DNA of 42,196 bases from Guillardia theta CCMP2712. Lineage: Eukaryota; Protista; Cryptophyta. The position numbers were made by a program, and so were the translations under genes. The notes below the pieces were generated by a model that had not been told where the DNA came from, made no database searches, and worked only from the letters and a program-made list of their open reading frames with translations. The stretch is from positions 1-42,196 of the forward strand of contig NW_005434574.1 of NCBI RefSeq assembly GCF_000315625.1, read 5' to 3'. Of the stretch, positions 477-9,984 are shown piece after piece. Numbering within the stretch: the first letter of the stretch is position 1; each line of letters opens with the position of its first letter.

Positions 477-1213
477 GCTGCCGAACCAACGGCTCCTTCC
501 TATGCTGAAAAGTATATCGGGGCCCTCATCCCCCCACACCCCGAGCTCTCGAACCGAGCCCGCGCAGTGAGATCATCCTACCCCCCTCCTACCCCCAAGG
601 TAGGAGCCAATTACCCCCCTAGTATCAGGACCTACCCCCCTACCTACCCTCCGCAGATTTGAGTAAAACGTTATCGATGGGATTAGCGGGAGAATGGCGG
701 CGAGGGGCATGACGACGATGAGGACGACGACGACGACGATGACGACGATGAGGAGGACGACGATGAAGAGGAGGAGGAGGACAGGCTGATAGAGGAACGA
801 CAGGAACAGATCGATACTTGCTAAGGTGAAAGACGCTCGCGCTGCTCTCGTTCCTCTGTGCACGTGTTCGAATGCGTCCCTGGGCCTTCCCACGCGCCCT
901 GCGCCCTGCGTACTGTTCCTGCATCAGAGACGTGCGATGTCGAGGAAGAGATGTCATTGTTGTGCTGTGAGAGAGGAGGGGCTGAACGTCTCTGTGCAAG
1001 TTCTTGGTGGTAGGAGTGTGGTAGACGAGTGCTTTTACAAGATCGGAATTTTGAAGTCCCCAATTGTGAGTTTGTGTTTAGCTAGACATTCTCAGTCGCT
1101 AATGTGCCTTGATCCATATTGCTTTTTTCCTGTCGTCTGACATCTCTCCTTTTTTCCTCCTCCTTCCTTCTTCCATGTGCAGATTCCCACAATTGAAATT
1201 CATGCTGCTCGAA

Positions 1214-1599
1214 ATGGCAGCAAGGAGCAAACTAATTTTCCTTTTCATTTCTTCCATGATCTTTTGGGGTATTCCCTCCGCTACGTCCTCTCCTTTCATG
1301 AGAGTGCTTCCAGATTGTCCTGTATCACATCAACTCTACCTCCCCGAGCACAACCCCATGGCAGCCATTGACCATGGGCCGCTGCCGTCCCCGAGTCAAC
1401 AAGGTTCTCAAGCGCCTCTGCTCGCTATTGTGCTGACCCAGCATGATGCAGCGCCCGGAGCCCTGCGACTGCGAGGAGGCTCGCTGTTCGGGTCCGCGAG
1501 CAAAGACATGCAAGGTCAAGGTAAGGACACGAGGCTGCTGGTTGTTGCTACAGGACCCTGTTGCTCCTCCAGGATCCTGCTCCTGCTCCTGCTCCTGCC

Positions 1600-1634
<35 letters not shown>

Positions 1635-4600
1635 CCCTGCTCCTTCCTACTCCAGGATCCTGCTCGTGCTCGTGCTCGTGCCCGTGCTCCTGCTCCTGCT
1701 CCTGCTCCTTCCTACTCTAGGATCCTGCTCCTGCTCCAGCCCCAGGATCCTGCTCCTGCTGTGCCTGCACCTTCGCTCACCACTCGTGTGCTTCTTCTGC
1801 TTTGATGCCTCCATGCTCAAACGTGCCTGGTCTCCCTGCCCATAGAGTAAGACTTGAATGTGCAGATGCTCAGAACCCCAACGCTGCTCCTTCCGGGGGA
1901 GCTTTTTCTAGTGGAGGTGCGAAGGAGGGGGAGGAGGAGGAGGGGGAGGAGGAGGAGGAGGAGGAGATGCTGCTGCTGCTGCTGGTGGTGGTGGTAGAGG
2001 AGGTTGTCATTTGAAGGCTGATGAGACTTCAGGAGCATTTGGAAGTGGAGCTTTTGGAATTTCAAATCCTAGTGCGAACAATGCTGCCTCATCCCCCTTC
2101 TCCTTCGGGCAAGCTGGAGGTCAGCTGAAATGCCTACTACTTCCTGCCTGCTTGCCTGTCTTTCTATCCCTCCCTATCCCTCCCTTTCCCTCCCTCCCTT
2201 TCCCTTTCCCTCCCTCCTTTTCCCTCCCTCCTTTTCCCTCCTCTTGTTCTCTGACTCCCCTATGTCAGGTGGGGGTTTCAATGCTGCGAGCTCGCAGCCG
2301 CCCTCCTTCGGCTTCGGGAGCTTCGGAGGCTTCGGTGGATCGCCGAGCATGCAGCCTTCTACTATGACGCCAGCAGCAGCAGCACAAGCTGCTCCTCCCA
2401 GCAGCTCGTTCATGTTCCCTGCAACATCAGGAGGAGGAGGAGGCGGGCAGAGCTTTCCTTCCTTTGGGTTCCATCCCACGACGGACTCTACTGGCGCAAG
2501 CGTCCCCCCCGCCATGCCGGCTACCCCGCAGCCACTGAAGTCTCCCTTCAACGCTGCTCAAGGTCTTGACTTGCCACTCCTCCCCTCGCTTTCTGCTGAC
2601 CTGCTGTCAGGTGTGGCTGGAGATGCTGCAGGGCCCGGCAGTTTCGGGCAGACGATTGCGCTACTTCGAGAGGACAACATGGAGACTTTCTTGTCCTCAA
2701 ATGCTCGACCAGTGAAAGCTATCCTTTTCACCAAGAAGACGGTTCAGACTCCTTCTCTCCTCTCCTCTCCTCTCCTCTCCTCTCCTCTCCTCTCCTCTCC
2801 TCTCCTCTCCTCTCCTCTCCTCTCCTCTCCTCTCCTCTCCTCTCCTCTCCTCTCCTCTCCTCTCCTCTTCCTTCTATTTCCTCCCTCATTCCCTCCCTGC
2901 TGCTCCTTCTCAGCTGATCTCTCACACCAGGAGACTCCGGCGGTCTGGCAGCGAGTCTTCGACGCTAACAAGGAGGAGTGCTTGTTCGGAGAGGTGCGGC
3001 ACACAGAGCACAAACTCTTGTCGCAGTTCGGCCTCCACGAGGATCAGCTCCCCAAGGTGATGATGCAGCTGGCCTCGGGGTCTTGCGTCTTCTACGAGGG
3101 CACCAACAACTTCGAGCGCATCAACGTGTTCGTCAAGTCAAACTCCCTCAAGTCCCTCACTGACCAGCCCGGCGCTCCCGGTGGCCTACAGACGCCATCG
3201 GCTGGCAGGGGACTGACCGGCGTCGGCCTCGGCTCGCTCTTCGGCTCCGTGCCTGACAGCAAGCTTCCTCCTCCCCTTCAGCAGGCTCCAGACCCAACCA
3301 GCTCCCCGATCCCAGCCGCACACCCCCCAGCTGACGCGCAGCAGCTCGGCTTCGCCTCCCTCCCGCAAACTCCGGCCATGAAGTTTGGGAGCCAGGCAGG
3401 ATTTCAGCTCACCAGCGAGCTGGACACTCCGATGCTGCATGGGAGAGCTCCTGCTCCTACTCCTGCTCCTGCTCCTACTCCTGCTGTTCGAGAGGAGGGG
3501 CTCCGAGCTCCGAACTTCGAGCTGGGCAGCTCGCCCTTCTTCTCCTCCAAACCCTTCCAGTCGGTTGTTTCCGACCAGCAGCAGCCCATACAGCATCGGG
3601 CAAGGGACCCTCCCGTAGTGGCTCACGAGCGGGAAGAACGGGCTCCTCCAGCTCCAGCTCCAGCTCCAGCTCCAGCTCCAGCTCTAGCTCCAGCTCCAAC
3701 AGTAACTCCGAGCTTCTTCTCGAGCGATCTTCGGCCCTTGCAGGAGCAAGGCTTCCAGCAGCCTTCTCGGGCAGGCGCGGCTGCAGCAGCTGACAACCAG
3801 GTGAAAGAGTCGCAGGCGTTGACAGTTAGCGGGGTGAGCAAGAGTTCGATGAGCGCTGAGATGGAGGAGGAGCACTGGAAGTTGAAACGTCTCGTGCTCC
3901 AGCACCCACTCCACCTCCCCTCAAGGTTGGAGCTCGCGGAGTTCCTTGCGTATCAGACACAAGACTTCGAGGCTGCAGATGAGGTAGGGGAGAGGAGAGG
4001 AGGGCAGGGGAGGAGAGGGGAGGAGAGGAGGCGGGATGGGATGGGGCGGAGAAGTATCTCCTTGAGCTGATGGTGTGGGGCAGGAGTACGACCGGGCTAT
4101 GGAGCTGGCAGAGAGGAACGAGGACGAGGACGGCAAGACGCATGTGCTCTGCTCGAGAGCCAACTTCCTCTTCATGCAGATGGGCAACTTCACAGGAGCA
4201 GAGTCTTGCTACCGGGAGGCCCTCGACCTGCACCCTCGAGACGTCACTCTCTGCTACAATCTCGGGCTCATGCTTGACTCCCAGCAGCGCTACAAGGATG
4301 CCGAGAGGATGTACAAGCGCGCCCTGAGGATCGACCCGCTGCACGCGCCCACCCTCGTCAACTATGCCGTGCTGCTGCAGGAGGAGCGCGGCGACAACGA
4401 GCAGGCAGAGGCCCTGTACCGCACGCTCCTCTCCTCCTCCTCCTCCCCTCCCGTCACCGCCCTTGTCAACTTCGGTCGCCTGCTCGCCGGGGTGAAGCAG
4501 AACCTGACGGGCGCCGACGAGATGTTCCAGCGAGCCCTGAATGCATCCCCCAGCTGCCTCCCAGCCCTTGTGAGCCGAGCTGAAGTCCAGCTGGGGATGG

Positions 4601-7600
4601 GGGAGGTGGAGACAGCGGAGGAGTGCCTGCAGGCGGCGTTGCGGAAGGCGCCCAAGGACGTGGACGCTCTGTGCGCATACGCGGCTCTGATGGAGAGAGA
4701 GTTCGAGGACACGGAAGGAGCGGAGAGGATGTACAGGAAGGCTCTGTCAGCGTGCTCGGGAGGAGACAGGAGGAGGAGAGTGAGGGTGCTGTGCCGGTAC
4801 GCGGGGCTGCTGGCGTCGGTGAAGCAGGACTACAAGCGAGCAGAAGAGCTTGTGGAGGAGGCGCTGGCGATCGACCCGTCGGTCAAGGGAGGAGTGAAGT
4901 TCCTGGAGATGGTTCGCAGTAAGCAGCTGGTGGGACGAGCGTTGCCCCCCAGCCTGAGCTCGCACGTCTCACTACCTCAAGGAGGAGCAGCAGGAGCAGG
5001 AGGGGAGGGAGAGGTCGATCTGGATGCTATCATCGAGTGGTTCCAATCCGCTTGCTCGTTGGAGTGCGAGCAGGCAAAGTCGCGATGGGGCAGAACAGAG
5101 GAGGAGGAGGCGAAGGAGGCGATAAGGCGTATAGAGTTGTATGCCAGCCAAGCTCTGGAGAGGATCAAAGCTGTCGACAAGGTCACATGCTCTCTCCCTC
5201 CTCCTCTCCCCTCCTCTCCTCTCCTCTCCTCTCCCCTCCCGTCGCCTCCCCTGCACTGCACCGCACTGCTCTGCTCTGCTCTGCTCTGCTCTCCTAATCT
5301 GGCTGAGCAGGATGTGAGAGTTCGTATCGAGGAACTCAAGGAGACATGCCGAGCGGGTAAGGGAGGAGGAGGAGGAGGAGGAGGAGGAGGAGGAGGAGGA
5401 GGGAGTGAGCTAATCTTCTTGCAGTTGACAAGATGAGACAAGAAAGGAAGGAGGAAGAGAGGAGAGAAGAGGAGAGGAGACGTGAGAGGAAGGAGGAGGA
5501 GAGGAGAGAAGAGGAGAGGAGACGGGAATGGAGGCAGGAGGAGAGGAGGGAAGAGGAGAGAAGGCAAGAGGAGAAGAAGACTTCGAATCCGTTCTTGTCA
5601 TCTCCGAGGATCAATCAAACGGATCACTCGACGGGTCTTGGCAGTCTCTTTGGCTTCAACTTGAACCCGTCAGCAGCAGCAGGAGCAGGAGCGGCAGCAG
5701 CAGCAGGAGCAGGAGCAGGAGCGGCAGCAGCAGCAGCAGGAGGATCGAGAGGCACCGCCGGCTTGTTCCCCATGCCAGACAAGGCTCGTGTGGAGGAGGC
5801 AGCGGCTGCTCCTGCTCAAGGTGGGCATCTTGTTTACAGCTCGATGGATGACGAAAGCCCGCAGGATTCTTCTTCTCCTCCTCTGGTCAACCTCCTCCTG
5901 CTCCTCCGTCCTTCTCTTTCTCCTCCTCGTCTGTCCAACAGGGAGCGCCGCTGCTTGTACAGGAGGGCTTCTGGGAGGAGGAGGGAGGAGAAGGAAACCC
6001 TGCCAACTGCGCTCCTCTCCTGAACCGGAACAACTTCTTCCTGAAAGATCCGTTTGTGTCTGGTGTGGTGGAGATCGGAGCAGAGAGGAAGAGGTACTCG
6101 ATCTAATCTGCTCTCCTCCCTCCTCCCTCCTCCCTCCTCCCTCCTCCCTCCTCCCTCCCTCCCACCTCTCCTCCCACCTCTCCTCCCTCGTTTCTCCTCC
6201 ACTTACACCTTCTCCTTGCTTTCCTTCCAAGCTTCTCCCCTTGACTTCCTACTTCATTACTCTCCTCCCTCTCCTCTCCATACATCCATTGCTCCCTCTC
6301 GCTCCCTCTCGCTCTCTCGCTCCCTCATCTGACTTCCCTCTTCCTCAGTGTTCGAAGCTCCTCGGAGGCTCTCAATGCTGCGAGCATGGCGCGTGTGAGG
6401 ACGTGGGTGGAGATCTCGGGAGGGTCGCAACTGAAGGTAGCGGAGAAGAGGAGGGAGGAGATAGCGGGTGAAGGGAAGGAGGAAGGGAGAGGAGGAGTGA
6501 GAGGAGGAAGGGTAGAGGAGGAGAGGGGCAGGAGGCGGGAGGCAGAGAAGGAGGCAGGGAGGAAGGAAGAGGAAGAAGAAGAGGAGAGAGGAGGGGAGGT
6601 TCATTGACGTGAGTGCTTTCAGTCGCTGCCACAACCTCAAGCTCTTCCTGAAGGAACTCGAATCCTTCAGGCAGATGCAGGTGAATAGAGGGGAGGAGCA
6701 CCCAGGGGAGGGGAGGGGAGGAGGAGGGAAAGGGAGGAGAGGAAAAGGGAGGAGGAAGAGCAGGAGCACGAGGAACACGACCACGAGAAGGAGGTGGAGA
6801 GACTTTGGTGTGAAACTGACGGTTATGACAGAAAGGACGTTCAAGAACCCTGCCTTCCGGGAGAGTATGGTGCGGATACTCAGCAAGGTAAGACACGAAG
6901 ACATGAAGATGGAGGAGGAGGGGGGAGCAAGGGGAATGAAGACGAGAGTGGGTAAGGAGGGAGAGGAGGGAGACAGACAGCAGGTAGGGGGAGCAGGAAG
7001 GAGGGGAAGCTTTACAACGATGGGGAGGAGGATGGTGACGTGAGGTGCAGGTGGCGGACGGAGACTACCATCAGGGGTTGGGCTACGTAGCAAGCTTCCT
7101 GCACCTCTACCTCTCCGAGGAGGAGGTCGCGCGTGTCCTCGTCGCTATGGGGAGAAGCGAGAAACATGCCAAGGGATACTGGAAGGCGAAACCAGAAGCC
7201 TTCGCGCGAGACGCCATGGTGTTTGAACGCCTGCTTGAGGTTACTAGACTCCCTCCGTCCCTCCGTCCCTCCGTCCCTCCGTCCCTCCTCCGTCCCTCCT
7301 TTCCCCTGACTCGCTCGCCTGCAGCAAAGGGACCCTGAGATCGCTGCTCGCCTTCGATCAGCTGGAGTTGTACCGGAGGCGTACGCGCAGAAGTGGTTCG
7401 TGGTGAGTAGAGGGTCTAGAGCTCTCGAGCCGCAGCTAACGGGCGCGGCAGGGGCTGTGCGTGCACGTACTTCCCTTCAGGTACCTGATGGACCTCATGG
7501 AGCGATACTTGCAGCGGGGATGGACGTACATCCTCCGCTTCGGGCTGGCCCTCGTGGAGCAGCTGCGGGGGAAGATGAAGCAGCTGGCGCCGCACGACTC

Positions 7601-9008
7601 GTCGAAACTTCTGGCGCTGCTGCGGCTCGATCCCAACTTTTTCCCCGACGACTCCTCGGACGCGTTTCTGGAGATTCTGAGCAGGGCGGAGAAGATCGAG
7701 CTGAATGAAGGAGAGATGGAGAGGATGCGGTCAGAAGAGATGAAGAAGCTGCAGGAGAAGCTGCAGGCTGTGAGAGAGCGAGAGCAGCAGATGCAGAACG
7801 AGTCGGGGGACGAGGAGGACGAGGAGGACGAGGAGGACGAAGCGGCTGAAGTAGAGGAGAGGAGGGAGAAGCTTGCAGTGACGTCGGACCAGGAGGGGAT
7901 CAGGACAGGCGAGGAGGAGGAGGACGTGCTGTTCTCCAGGAGGTCGAAGATGTTCCGCTTCAACGACGAGAAGAAGGAGTGGAAGGAGAGAGGGCTGGGA
8001 GAGCTCAAGCTCTTGCTCAACAGGAGGACGGGAAGGATTCGCGTCTTGATGAGGAGGGAGGAGACTCTCAAGGTTTGTGCCAACCACGTGGTGACCAAGG
8101 ACCTGGAGCTTCAGCCCATGGCAGGGACGGACAAGGCCTGGACTTACTTCACCGCCGACTACTCGGGGATCAACGAGATGGGCGAGTACACGGGAGAAGT
8201 TTACACGGAGCTCTTCGCCTTCCGGTTCAAGGACCCGCAGGCGGCACGAGACTGGAAGGACGCGGTTGAGAAGTGCAAGGCTGGGGACTTGTCAGGGTTC
8301 TCGAGGAAGGACGCGATGCTTGACCGACCCAAGAGAAAGGAGGAGCCTGACCTGGTGGACGAGAGACAAGTGGCTGGAGTCGGGGCGGAAGAGGGAGAAG
8401 ATGGCGGAGGAGGAGATGGCGCAGCAGCAGGGATCGAGAGAGGAGGAGGAGGAGGAGGAGGAGGAGGAGGAGGCATCGACTTCTCGGTGCTCCGAGGCTT
8501 CGCCACCAGCGAGATGGGCAGCGGCAAGGCCGAGGAAGGAGACGAGCAGATGGGAAACCTCACTGCTCAGCTGGGAAGTTCTTTCTTCTCCCTCTCCCCC
8601 AAGCAGACACCCAGCAGCGGCGGAAGCTGGTCTGACCTGAACGCTTCACAGGTGTCAGATCTCAACTCGGTCCTCAACTCCTCCGTGTTCAACCCCTTCC
8701 GCCTCTTCAATAGCAGCTCCTTCACCCCCTTCAGCTGGCAGAATCCCCCAGCTCCCTCCCGCCTCTCCAATCCCTTCGCTGAGGGCGCGACGGACGAGGG
8801 GACGTGGAGGTGCGGGTTGTGCTGGACGACCAACGGCAACTCGAGCAAGTGCGTCGTTTGTGGGGCCCCGCAGGAGGAGAAGGCAGAGAAATTCTCGGCG
8901 ATGCCTGACAAGAGTTCGTCATGGGGCTTCGGGACGAGGAAGAACAATGTGCTGGAGGAAGTGGAGGAGGAGGAGGAGGAGGAGGAGACGGAAGAGTCGG
9001 AGGACTAG
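1214..9008 (+). CDS. ~1880-aa Nup358/RanBP2-like multidomain protein: signal peptide, LRLRGG, FG-rich tracts, thioredoxin-like, TPR, TBC (RabGAP fold), RanBP1 domain, RanBP2-type zinc finger
   Basis: Phase-consistent GT-AG model, exons 1214-1520, 1866-1916, 2033-2119, 2269-2562, 2611-2741, 2931-3983, 4084-4918, 4982-5181, 5311-5356, 5425-5885, 5942-6093, 6349-6436, 6623-6680, 6832-6887, 7051-7239, 7325-7402, 7452-9008 (5643 nt). Motifs: TPR (AESCYREALDLHP, AERMYKRALRIDP), TBC ILQADAERTF and DYHQGLGYVASFL, RanBD TGEEEE/WKERGLG/RVLMRREETLKVCANH, zinc finger WRCGLCWTTN..CVVC. Confidence 0.8.
2752..2867. repeat. (CTCCT)n intronic microsatellite
   Basis: Pentamer run inside intron 2742-2930. Confidence 0.9.
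6623..7700 (+). other. TBC (Tre-2/Bub2/Cdc16) GAP domain within the large gene
   Basis: The Arg-finger motif IxxDxxRT appears only after splicing intron 6681-6831 (RILQADA|ERTFKNP). Gln finger YHQG; downstream PEAYAQKWFVGLCVHVLPF and ILRFGLAL. Confidence 0.85.
7896..8280 (+). other. RanBP1-type Ran-binding domain within the large gene
   Basis: GIRTGEEEEDVLFSRRSKMFRF..KEWKERGLGELKLL...RIRVLMRREETLKVCANH...DKAWTY...ELFAFRFKD matches the RanBD consensus. Confidence 0.92.
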
Positions 9009-9984
9009 TCTCTTGAGAATAAAGTTTCAGCTGGAGAACATGAGAGGAAGGCTTGAGAGGAGGGAACGCTGAGGGGAAGCAGACAGAAGAGGATACGATA
9101 GGTGACAGGAGTCGAGGAGGTTGAAAGAAAGCGAAGGCTGAGAACAGGGAGAAATGTAAGAGCGATCCAGGAATGGAGGAGCAGAGATTAGTGAGGAGTC
9201 AGGAAGAGGAGAGGAGAGGAGAGGAGAGGAGAGGAGAGGAGAGGCGAGGAGAGGAGGGAGGGAGGGGAGGGGAGGGGAGGAGGGAGGAGGAGAGGAGGAG
9301 GAGGGGAGGNNNNNNNNNNNNNNNNNNNNNNNNNNNNNNNNNNNNNNNNNNNNNNNNNNNNNNNNNNNNNNNNNNNNNNNNNNNNNNNNNNNNNNNNNNN
9401 NNNNNNNNNTCTGCAAGAGTTCCACATTGGACGTCAGATATAGTGCACAGATATAATAGCAACATCATAACCATGATTGTGAACGAAGAAAAGTTTACAA
9501 CAACCCAAGATAGATGCAAGATGTCCACATGAACATTCAGATGGGTTCCTTTATTCGGAGATGTTATTTTCTTAGTACACCAGGTCCCGGCGCATCCACG
9601 AAATGACTACAGGGTCCATGCGTCATAGGGTTGTGCTCGTGAAGTTCGGACTTTGTTCACACGCTTGAATTCAGGAGAGGAGAGGAGAGGAGAGGAGAGG
9701 AGAGGAGAGGGGTCAAGAATTATGTTGTGGGGAAGGAAAAAGTATGAACTTTGTGGGAGAGAAGTCGTGAAGTATGGCAAGGAGAGGAGAGAAGAGGTGA
9801 AGCGTAAAGACAGAAAGGAAAAGTCAGGTACCTTTACGTGTAGTGAGTTATGGGAACAAGGAAATGTTTACAAAGTGGAAGGTGAGGAGGGTCTGAGGGG
9901 AGGGGAGATTGGTAGGAACCAAGCAGAGTCAAATGTAGTGAGGTACAGGTACAAGTTTGATACACAAAAGAGGAAAAAATGTTT

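What the first reader, a model, noticed from the sequence alone, without database searches (positions are those of the whole stretch)
1214..1520. Signal peptide plus ubiquitin-tail LRLRGG presequence: nucleoporin possibly imported to the periplastid compartment/nucleomorph
Seen: exon 1 reads MAARSKLIFLFISSMIFWGIPSATSS..., then ~60 residues, then GALRLRGG|SLFGS (LRLRGG at 1463-1480, aa 84-89) directly before the first FG-type motif. Known: LRLRGG is the ubiquitin C-terminus cut by deubiquitinases. In complex red plastids a signal peptide followed by a non-Phe residue directs proteins to the periplastid compartment through the ERAD-derived SELMA system. Inference: a Ran-cycle protein has no role in the ER lumen, but it would in the remnant red-algal cytosol around a cryptophyte nucleomorph. 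This may be a host-encoded nucleomorph pore/RanGAP component matured by a DUB-like protease.
Basis: partly seen in the sequence, partly recalled or inferred. Interest (0 to 1): 0.85.

Follow-up and report, generated by a model that had tools for sequence, protein, structure and literature searches.

The report
Periplastid-type leader on a Ran-binding nucleoporin-like protein
A cryptophyte alga's only large FG-repeat, Ran-binding, Nup358-like protein starts with the same leader (signal peptide, spacer, ALRLRGG) as proteins shown to enter the compartment holding the relict second nucleus, so it is a testable candidate part of that nucleus's unknown pore or Ran system.

Summary
RNA-type contigs from three studies split "exon 1" with two in-frame mini-introns of 45 and 48 nt. 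These remove GIPSATSSPFMRVLP (the supposed cleavage site) and GSQAPLLAIVLTQHDA. The hydrophobic start (MAARSKLIFLFISSMIFW) and ALRLRGG|SLFGS remain.

The genome is a cryptophyte: 87.1 Mb in 669 contigs, with 23 phycoerythrin-alpha hits, probably Guillardia theta. So a nucleomorph is expected.

The bare hexamer is not rare. The context is what matters:
- All six G. theta periplastid (PPC) proteins localised by GFP fusion in the ASAFind 2.0 supplement end their leaders in x(LR)LRGG. Two of them read exactly ALRLRGG.
- Genome-wide, 10 of 19 other ALRLRGG sites lie 25-65 residues after a Met plus hydrophobic start. Background is 2-5%, p about 3e-9.
- A metagenomic ortholog has a likely first exon with a 14-residue hydrophobic start and ALRGG.

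The other two RanBD genes, RanBP1-like and Nup50-like, lack such leaders.

Best reading (about 0.6): a PPC-targeted Nup358-like protein. Cleavage by a deubiquitinase and a role at the nucleomorph pore are inferences.

First readers of this scan noted LRLRGG leaders elsewhere in this genome (s1-430491, s1-433748). No searchable paper describes the motif.

The parts
673..825 (+). 5' UTR exon with a cluster of upstream ATGs. The uORF from ATG 694 encodes 31 aa (MAARGMTT...), so it ends at 786 and its stop codon is 787-789. An in-frame TAA for the main ORF lies at 821-823.
   Evidence: RNA-type contigs join 823/825 to 1181/1183 in three runs. ATG and ORF listing on the spliced sequence.
1183..1268 (+). 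First coding exon. Start codons at 1202 (weak context) and 1214 (G at -3, G at +4). It encodes MAARSKLIFLFISSMIFW: basic n-region R4 and K6, then a 12-residue hydrophobic core at 1232-1267.
   Evidence: Best 9-residue Kyte-Doolittle mean is 2.58, inside the 2.33-3.58 range of the other ALRLRGG leaders that pass the 2.3 cut-off.
1269..1313 (+). In-frame mini-intron of 45 nt, GT..AG.
   Evidence: Joint seen in X3, X4 and X9. Splice sites checked.
1314..1403 (+). Spacer (transit-peptide-like) exon: (D)CPVSHQLYLPEHNPMAAIDHGPLPSPSQQ. Contains the internal in-frame ATG at 1358.
1404..1451 (+). In-frame mini-intron of 48 nt, GT..AG. It removes GSQAPLLAIVLTQHDA.
   Evidence: Joint seen in X3 and X9. 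Splice sites checked.
1452..1520 (+). Exon with the end of the leader, APGALRLRGG (ALRLRGG = 1460-1480), followed directly by the first FG unit, SLFG (1481-1492).
   Evidence: The same heptapeptide ends the leaders of G. theta PPC 14-3-3 and cyclophilin.
1866..3977 (+). FG-repeat region (14 FG dipeptides in the first 608 residues) in exons 1866-1916, 2033-2119, 2269-2562, 2611-2741 and 2931-3977. A thioredoxin-like domain is embedded in it (2611-2741 plus 2931 to about 3170).
   Evidence: Joints; spliced ORF; FG count. Thioredoxin_6 is a weak match only (E 0.0037 for the ortholog, 0.19 for the window piece). This stretch is collinear with L012.
4084..5220 (+). TPR domain.
   Evidence: Pfam TPR_1 E 1.3e-22 plus many related TPR families.
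7045..7260 (+). Exon of a TBC/RabGAP-like domain.
   Evidence: PF00566, E 8.4e-05, 22.8 bits, below the 25.2-bit cut-off. The ortholog's called gene carries PF00566.
7899..8279 (+). Ran-binding domain (RanBD1).
   Evidence: PF00638, 129-132 bits.
8805..8870 (+). CX2C...CX2C zinc-finger-like motif (WRCGLCWTTNGNSSKCVVCG).
   Evidence: Seen by eye. PF00641 is not met in the window. It is met in the ortholog P0139 (30.1 bits against a 27-bit cut-off).

Best explanation
The gene (about 673-9008, + strand) encodes one large protein of a cryptophyte, built from FG repeats, a thioredoxin-like domain, TPR repeats, a TBC-like domain and a Ran-binding domain. Its first 58 residues are a periplastid-compartment (PPC) targeting leader of the kind this species uses for other cytosol-type proteins. 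The proposed route has four steps. (1) A short signal peptide (MAARSKLIFLFISS...) takes the nascent chain into the chloroplast-ER lumen. (2) The roughly 40-residue spacer, which probably has no aromatic residue at its first position, carries it across the second membrane through the ERAD-derived SELMA translocon. (3) The leader ends in ALRLRGG, a copy of the ubiquitin C-terminal tail, and is cut off there, most plausibly by a PPC deubiquitinase. The mature protein would then start at SLFGS. (4) In the PPC the FG and Ran-binding protein acts at the nucleomorph envelope, as a pore-associated Ran-binding factor. Shown here: the transcript structure, the open reading frame, the domain content, that the organism is a cryptophyte, and that this leader belongs to a statistically real leader class shared with PPC proteins localised by GFP fusion. 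Inferred: actual import, the cleavage site and the enzyme, and the function at the nucleomorph.
For: The organism is a cryptophyte: 23 hits to cryptophyte phycoerythrin alpha, in an 87,145,349-bp genome of 669 contigs. The spliced transcript keeps the hydrophobic start and ALRLRGG in one ORF, closed upstream by a TAA, and ATG 1214 has a good context. In the ASAFind 2.0 supplement (PMC12136025), all six G. theta PPC proteins localised by GFP fusion end their leaders the same way: EF-1alpha ..SPSMLRLRGG|GKEKHH, 14-3-3 ..VFALRLRGG|VDGE, RRM1 ..SSPLRLRGG|F, cyclophilin ..PQALRLRGG|G, Ubc8 ..IPLRGG|A, ugg-t ..MSLRGG|A. sCdc48 (..CMRLRGG|N) does too. In EF-1alpha the motif abuts the canonical mature start GKEK; that this is the canonical start is my own knowledge. 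Genome-wide, the ALRLRGG pattern has 32 hits against 10 for the control. Ten of 19 other strict sites have a Met plus hydrophobic start 25-65 residues upstream in the same frame, against a background of 2.3-4.7% (p about 3e-9). Two more are known signal-peptide proteins whose signal peptide lies in an upstream exon. Class members include SAP-domain and ankyrin proteins, that is, cytosolic or nuclear types. After splicing, the distance from Met to the motif is 51 residues, the same as in 14-3-3. The ortholog locus L012 is collinear from the thioredoxin-like domain to the RanBD. It has an upstream ORF MRNFFLLAVACASS.CFAV...YRALRGGYE followed by GTATGC, in phase with the FG exon. That ORF is intact and free of indels in three relatives. 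The other two RanBD genes in the genome, RanBP1-like and Nup50-like, have no such leader. PPC leaders tolerate acidic residues (PMC12136025). A PPC deubiquitinase, ptDUP, is localised in diatoms, and the G. theta PPC ubiquitin precursor itself needs cutting after RGG.
Against: There is no localisation or N-terminal proteomic data for this protein. SignalP, TargetP and ASAFind could not be run, so the signal-peptide call rests on hydropathy and analogy. After splicing, the region after the hydrophobic core (DCPVSHQ) has no textbook AXA site. The spacer is net neutral and has one lysine, and from memory SELMA import is reported to need lysines. An in-frame ATG at 1358 with a fair context, plus a uORF-rich leader, could give a leaderless cytosolic isoform. 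The gene is single copy, and a survey found no signal peptides on host nucleoporins of cryptophytes (PMC6411479). That survey found no Nup358 and so did not score this gene. No RNA shows that the L012 first exon joins the FG exon, and the L012 organism is unidentified. Whether the PPC has its own Ran could not be checked.
Confidence: 0.6

Rival explanations
1. Dual use. The same gene gives a PPC-targeted form from ATG 1214 and a leaderless cytosolic form from ATG 1358, by leaky scanning or reinitiation after the uORFs. The cytosolic form would serve the host nuclear pore.
For: The gene is single copy. Seven upstream ATGs lie in the 5' exon, and ATG 1358 (CCCC ATG G) is in frame downstream of the hydrophobic core. 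The reference list of PMC12136025 cites Gile et al. [quoted passage not shown] That this works through alternative start codons is my recollection, not checked here.
Against: The L012 first exon has no second Met. ATG 1214 has the better context. The contigs show no alternative 5' end, though contigs drop rare forms.
Confidence: 0.15
2. An ordinary host cytoplasmic-filament nucleoporin. The hydrophobic N-terminus is not a working signal peptide, and ALRLRGG is a chance or non-targeting element.
For: The domain set resembles cytosolic Nup358/RanBP2. Host nucleoporins of cryptophytes generally lack signal peptides. LRLRGG-like hexamers occur about 250 times by chance in six frames. The c-region after splicing is not canonical.
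Against: The joint pattern of start, spacer and ALRLRGG is about 10-20 times over background and is tied to verified PPC proteins. It recurs in the ortholog. RanBP1-like and Nup50-like host genes already exist without leaders.
Confidence: 0.12
3. The N-terminus inserts the protein into the ER, outer nuclear or chloroplast-ER membrane, or releases it into the ER lumen, without crossing SELMA.
For: Charges before the hydrophobic core (R4, K6) and an acidic residue after it fit an N-in orientation. A thioredoxin-like domain of PDI b-type, weakly matched, would suit the ER lumen.
Against: Twelve to thirteen hydrophobic residues are too few for a membrane span. RanBD, TPR, TBC and FG repeats have no known lumenal role. 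The leader class is PPC-associated.
Confidence: 0.06

Closest known systems
Guillardia theta PPC-targeted proteins with bipartite leaders (14-3-3, cyclophilin, EF-1alpha, RRM1, Ubc8, ugg-t, sCdc48; Gould et al. 2006, as compiled in ASAFind 2.0, PMC12136025)
   Same: A short signal peptide, a spacer of about 15-75 residues, then x(LR)LRGG directly before the mature, cytosol-type domain. The heptapeptide ALRLRGG is identical to that of 14-3-3 and cyclophilin, and the Met-to-motif distance is the same as in 14-3-3.
   Different: The passenger is a very large FG, TPR, TBC-like and RanBD protein, roughly 1,800-1,900 residues by my estimate, a class not reported in the PPC. The leader is split over three mini-exons. 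The signal-peptide c-region is less canonical. Nothing has been localised.
Nup358/RanBP2 (metazoan cytoplasmic-filament nucleoporin)
   Same: TPR, FG repeats and a RanBP1-type Ran-binding domain, plus a RanBP2-type zinc finger (Pfam-supported in the ortholog). The top hits of the RanBD region are multi-RanBD, RanBP2-like proteins of 35-46% identity.
   Different: One RanBD (two in the ortholog) against four. No SUMO-E3 or cyclophilin domain was detected. An FG and thioredoxin-like region precedes the TPR. A TBC-like domain is inserted. It has an N-terminal secretory-type leader. Nup358 was reported absent from cryptistans.
RanBP1 and Nup50/Nup2 of the same genome (L010, L011)
   Same: They share the RanBD.
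   Different: They are short proteins with no hydrophobic start and no LRGG leader. They look like the host's cytosolic and basket factors.
Ubiquitin and ubiquitin-like precursors cut by deubiquitinases after LRLRGG
   Same: The identical six-residue tail. The PPC ubiquitin of G. theta is itself made as a leader, UBL(..LRVRGG) and ubiquitin fusion that must be cut after RGG. A PPC deubiquitinase, ptDUP, is localised in diatoms.
   Different: No ubiquitin fold precedes the tail here: Pfam finds nothing in 1214-1519. The peptide is a tail mimic, not a UBL.

Membership tests
Cryptophyte PPC-targeted preprotein (bipartite leader) | N-terminal ER signal peptide | tested here: inconclusive
   Basic n-region and a 12-residue hydrophobic core (KD9 2.58), within the range of the class. 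SignalP was not available. The c-region after splicing is not canonical.
Cryptophyte PPC-targeted preprotein (bipartite leader) | Transit-peptide-like spacer whose first residue is not aromatic | tested here: inconclusive
   If the cut follows ISS, as the alignment with the L012 start suggests, +1 is Met. The cleavage site is not determined.
Cryptophyte PPC-targeted preprotein (bipartite leader) | Leader ends in x(LR)LRGG before the mature domain. This feature is empirical, derived here from the six GFP-localised proteins. | tested here: met
   ALRLRGG|SLFG at 1460-1492, compared.
Cryptophyte PPC-targeted preprotein (bipartite leader) | Experimental localisation in the PPC or nucleomorph | not testable with these tools
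   Needs a GFP fusion or immuno-EM.
Nup358/RanBP2 | TPR, FG repeats and RanBD | tested here: met
   Pfam TPR and PF00638; 14 FG dipeptides in the N-terminal 608 residues.
Nup358/RanBP2 | RanBP2-type zinc fingers | tested here: inconclusive
   PF00641 is not met in the window, only a CX2C..CX2C motif. It is met in the ortholog P0139.
Nup358/RanBP2 | Four RanBDs, SUMO-E3 (IR) region and C-terminal cyclophilin domain | tested here: not met
   One RanBD and no cyclophilin hit in the ORFs scanned. So it is Nup358-like in build, not a member.
Ubiquitin-like proteins | Beta-grasp fold before the LRLRGG tail | tested here: not met
   No Pfam family in 1214-1519. About 50 residues of low-complexity spacer precede the tail.

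The most novel reading that the evidence does not exclude
The nucleomorph, currently described as a nucleus without a canonical pore complex, receives a host-encoded FG-repeat and Ran-binding protein. This protein, like all six G. theta PPC proteins localised by GFP fusion, is matured by a periplastid deubiquitinase cutting after a built-in ubiquitin-tail mimic (xLRLRGG). The SELMA import route would then carry its own processing site for the presequence.
Probability: 0.3. Interest if true: 0.9.

Novelty: new variant of a known kind. Interest (0 to 1): 0.78.

Why it matters
How the nucleomorph exchanges molecules with its surrounding cytoplasm is an open question. Genome and transcriptome surveys found no nucleoporins directed to it and concluded that it works without a canonical pore complex (PMC6411479). 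A host-encoded protein with FG repeats and a Ran-binding domain that carries a PPC-class leader gives that question a concrete candidate, testable with one GFP construct and one antibody.

Separately, the x(LR)LRGG ending looks like a general, easily scored mark of cryptophyte PPC leaders. It is present in all six GFP-localised cases and is strongly enriched genome-wide. It suggests a processing step at a ubiquitin-tail mimic. I found no description of it in the searchable literature. If it holds, it would improve PPC proteome prediction and link presequence removal to the ubiquitin machinery of SELMA.

Tried and rejected
- **Read laying on 500-6400:** I laid 500-2750 instead, so joints beyond 2742 come only from loose ends and ORF logic.
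- **Raw RNA run X20:** gave no reads, so it is no test.
- **The search of protein representatives with the RanBD ORF:** the list was dominated by multi-RanBD animal-type proteins. Only P0139 was an ortholog.
- **Two homologous-protein searches with the G. theta FG and thioredoxin-like ORF:** both blank, because of low-complexity words and the length window. The third search and the metagenome scan found only the L012 lineage at 94-100% identity. No independent third ortholog was found, and no Goniomonas or MMETSP comparison was possible.
- **L012 against L013-L016:** they are 86-92% identical in introns as well, too close to mark exons by conservation.
- **tblastn of the G. theta leader on L012:** no significant match to the hydrophobic part. 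I found the L012 first exon by reading the ORFs, so its link to the gene is an inference.
- **Ran in this genome:** two degenerate patterns for Ran gave nothing. Papers on cryptophyte nucleomorph genomes gave no statement on Ran or importin. gsp2 is reported only for chlorarachniophyte nucleomorphs.
- **Literature on the motif:** searches for LRGG or RLRGG with periplastid or cryptophyte terms gave nothing. Felsner 2010 and Moog 2011 do not mention the motif. Gould 2006 and Curtis 2012 are not held, so prior description there cannot be excluded.
- **Rejected: the hexamer is remarkable on its own**.
- **Rejected: the leader is a ubiquitin-like domain**.

Full report
**Observation**

The window is eukaryotic, with GT..AG introns full of simple repeats.

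The single read-laying run had to avoid a repeat at 2755-2868, so it covered 500-2750. The raw RNA run X20 gave no reads. Contigs of three RNA-type runs from three studies (X3, X4, X9) gave the same joints. After shifting each joint to GT..AG, the structure is:

| Feature | Coordinates | Length |
|---|---|---|
| 5' exon | 673 or earlier to 825 | |
| intron | 826-1182 | 357 nt |
| exon | 1183-1268 | |
| mini-intron | 1269-1313 | 45 nt |
| exon | 1314-1403 | |
| mini-intron | 1404-1451 | 48 nt |
| exon | 1452-1520 | |
| intron | 1521-1865 | 345 nt |
| exon | 1866-1916 | |
| intron (from record coordinates; its row was dropped at a repeat) | 1917-2032 | 116 nt |
| exon | 2033-2119 | |
| intron | 2120-2268 | 149 nt |
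| exon | 2269-2562 | |
| intron | 2563-2610 | 48 nt |
| exon | 2611-2741 | |
| intron | 2742-2930 | 189 nt |
| exon | from 2931 | |

Both mini-introns are in frame. They remove GIPSATSSPFMRVLP, the supposed peptidase site, and GSQAPLLAIVLTQHDA.

The protein read from the mRNA starts MAARSKLIFLFISSMIFWDCPVSHQLYLPEHNPMAAIDHGPLPSPSQQAPGALRLRGGSLFGS. ALRLRGG is residues 52-58. The frame is closed upstream by TAA at 821-823. In-frame ATGs are at 1202 (T at -3), 1214 (G at -3 and at +4) and 1358. The 5' exon carries seven upstream ATGs.

**Organism**

The window's genome has 87,145,349 bases in 669 contigs and 23 matches to the cryptophyte phycoerythrin alpha family. From memory, that size and contig count fit Guillardia theta CCMP2712. 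The match of locus L036 to the ASAFind entry gt_96401 supports the species. So the refuting condition "organism has no nucleomorph" does not apply.

**The gene**

Pfam finds TPR (4084-5220), a TBC fragment (7045-7260, below the cut-off) and a strong RanBD. The spliced N-terminal 608 residues hold 14 FG dipeptides and a thioredoxin-like domain that is only weakly matched.

A zinc-finger-like CX2C..CX2C lies at 8805-8870. PF00641 is not met there, but it is met in the ortholog.

The genome has only three RanBD loci. The other two read as a RanBP1-like protein and a Nup50-like protein, both without a hydrophobic start.

**Is LRLRGG meaningful?**

Alone, it is not. A degenerate LRLRGG pattern has 353 genomic hits against 255 for the reversed control. 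In context, it is.

The supplement of ASAFind 2.0 (PMC12136025) lists the G. theta PPC proteins used for its PPC matrix. All six that were localised by GFP fusion in Phaeodactylum end their leaders in the same motif, directly before the conserved mature part:

| Protein | End of leader and start of mature part |
|---|---|
| EF-1alpha | SPSMLRLRGG, then GKEKHH |
| 14-3-3 | VFALRLRGG, then VDGE |
| RRM1 | SSPLRLRGG, then F |
| cyclophilin | PQALRLRGG, then G |
| Ubc8 | IPLRGG, then A |
| ugg-t | MSLRGG, then A |
| sCdc48 (assigned by homology) | CMRLRGG, then N |

Some diatom PPC proteins show LRGG or RGG as well (Der1-1, TrxH, sCdc48).

I then searched the genome for ALRLRGG, which ubiquitin (VLRLRGG) cannot produce. 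There were 32 hits against 10 for the control. In the first 30 loci there are 20 strict sites. Of the 19 sites other than this gene's:
- Ten have, in the same open frame 25-65 residues upstream, a Met followed by a 9-residue stretch with mean hydropathy of at least 2.3.
- The background over all frames of the same loci is 2.3-4.7%, which gives a binomial p of about 3e-9.
- Two further sites are the cyclophilin and a fructose-bisphosphatase-like protein, whose signal peptides lie in an upstream exon.
- Members include a SAP-domain protein and an ankyrin protein.

This gene passes the same test. After splicing, its Met-to-motif distance is 51 residues, the same as in 14-3-3.

**Ortholog**

The only ortholog reachable was P0139, on an 18.9-kb freshwater metagenome contig (L012). 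It is collinear with the window from the thioredoxin-like domain through TPR and TBC to the RanBD.

Upstream of its FG exon lies an ORF, at 900-1088: MRNFFLLAVACASSCFAVTCGGG...GYRALRGGYE, followed by GTATGC. It ends in phase 0, and the FG exon after CAG at 2019-2021 starts in phase 0. It is intact and free of indels in three relatives, where changes such as C to F keep the start hydrophobic.

Both proteins thus have a 14-residue start ending in SS, a spacer of about 40 residues and ALR(LR)GG near the exon end. No RNA proves the join, and the organism of L012 is unknown.

**Mechanism**

Shown: the transcript, the ORF, the domains and membership of a real leader class tied to PPC proteins.

Inferred:
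- Entry into the chloroplast ER by the signal peptide.
- Passage through SELMA.
- Removal of the leader at the ubiquitin-tail mimic.
- Action at the nucleomorph envelope.

The deubiquitinase idea has indirect support:
- The motif sits at the junction between leader and mature part.
- The PPC ubiquitin precursor of G. theta needs a cut after RGG.
- A PPC deubiquitinase is localised in diatoms and has been proposed to mature imported proteins.
- PPC leaders tolerate acidic residues, so the net-neutral spacer is no objection.

**Against**

- No signal-peptide predictor could be run.
- The c-region is not canonical.
- ATG 1358 and the uORFs allow a leaderless form.
- The gene is single copy.
- A PPC Ran could not be confirmed.
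- Irwin and Keeling (PMC6411479) found no signal peptides on host nucleoporins. They reported no Nup358 in cryptistans, so they did not assess this gene. They state that how a nucleomorph pore is built is unclear.

**Novelty**

The leader type is known. Its x(LR)LRGG ending is not described in any paper I could search. Two key papers are not held. First readers of this scan noted LRLRGG leaders elsewhere in this genome. A PPC-directed FG and Ran-binding protein would be new.

**Verdict**

The best explanation has confidence of about 0.6, and interest is high.

Noticed in passing
G000 loci L020, L022, L023, L028, L030, L031, L035, L036, L039, L041 (and L019, L043): This genome has a leader class of signal peptide, then a 25-65 residue spacer, then ALRLRGG. 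Its members include a SAP-domain protein (L030), an ankyrin-repeat protein (L039) and basic, nuclear-looking proteins (L031, plus L044 with the variant AFRLRGG). These are candidate PPC or nucleomorph cargo.
   Followed up: partly
window 2611-2741 and 2931-3170; L012 2532-2879: A thioredoxin-like domain sits between FG blocks. The Pfam Thioredoxin_6 match is weak (E 0.0037 in the ortholog). It is 40% identical between the two lineages, with invariant TPAVW, LPKV and NF.RI.VF. It is unusual in a nucleoporin-like protein.
   Followed up: partly
window 694-789: The 5' UTR exon has seven ATGs. The longest uORF (MAARGMTTMRTTTTT..., 31 aa) begins with the same four residues, MAAR, as the main ORF.
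   Followed up: no
window 1269-1313, 1404-1451, 1521-1865, 2563-2610, 2742-2930: Five of the eight introns mapped here have lengths divisible by three and no in-frame stop. Genomic ORFs therefore read straight through them, which misleads reading from raw sequence.
   Followed up: yes
L012 1320-1345, 1540-1560, 1985-2015: The introns of the ortholog contain interstitial telomere-like (TTTAGGG)n repeats and a duplicated 3' splice-site segment.
   Followed up: no
L012 6579-7100 compared with window 7872-8141: The ortholog has a second RanBD between TPR and TBC, and its RanBP2-type zinc finger lies before the last RanBD rather than after it. The domain order is not fixed in this family.
   Followed up: partly
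PMC12136025, supplement file 19 (gt_155024): The PPC ubiquitin of G. theta is encoded as signal peptide, spacer, a degenerate ubiquitin-like domain ending in LRVRGG, and then ubiquitin. This implies that cleavage after RGG takes place inside the PPC.
   Followed up: no
window about 9290-9410: A run of N (an assembly gap) lies just downstream of the gene's 3' end.
   Followed up: no
runs X8, X15, X18: Freshwater and lake metagenome runs hold up to 38% of the 31-mers of this stretch. That is odd for a species I recall as marine, and could reflect contamination, a spike-in or a very close freshwater relative.
   Followed up: no
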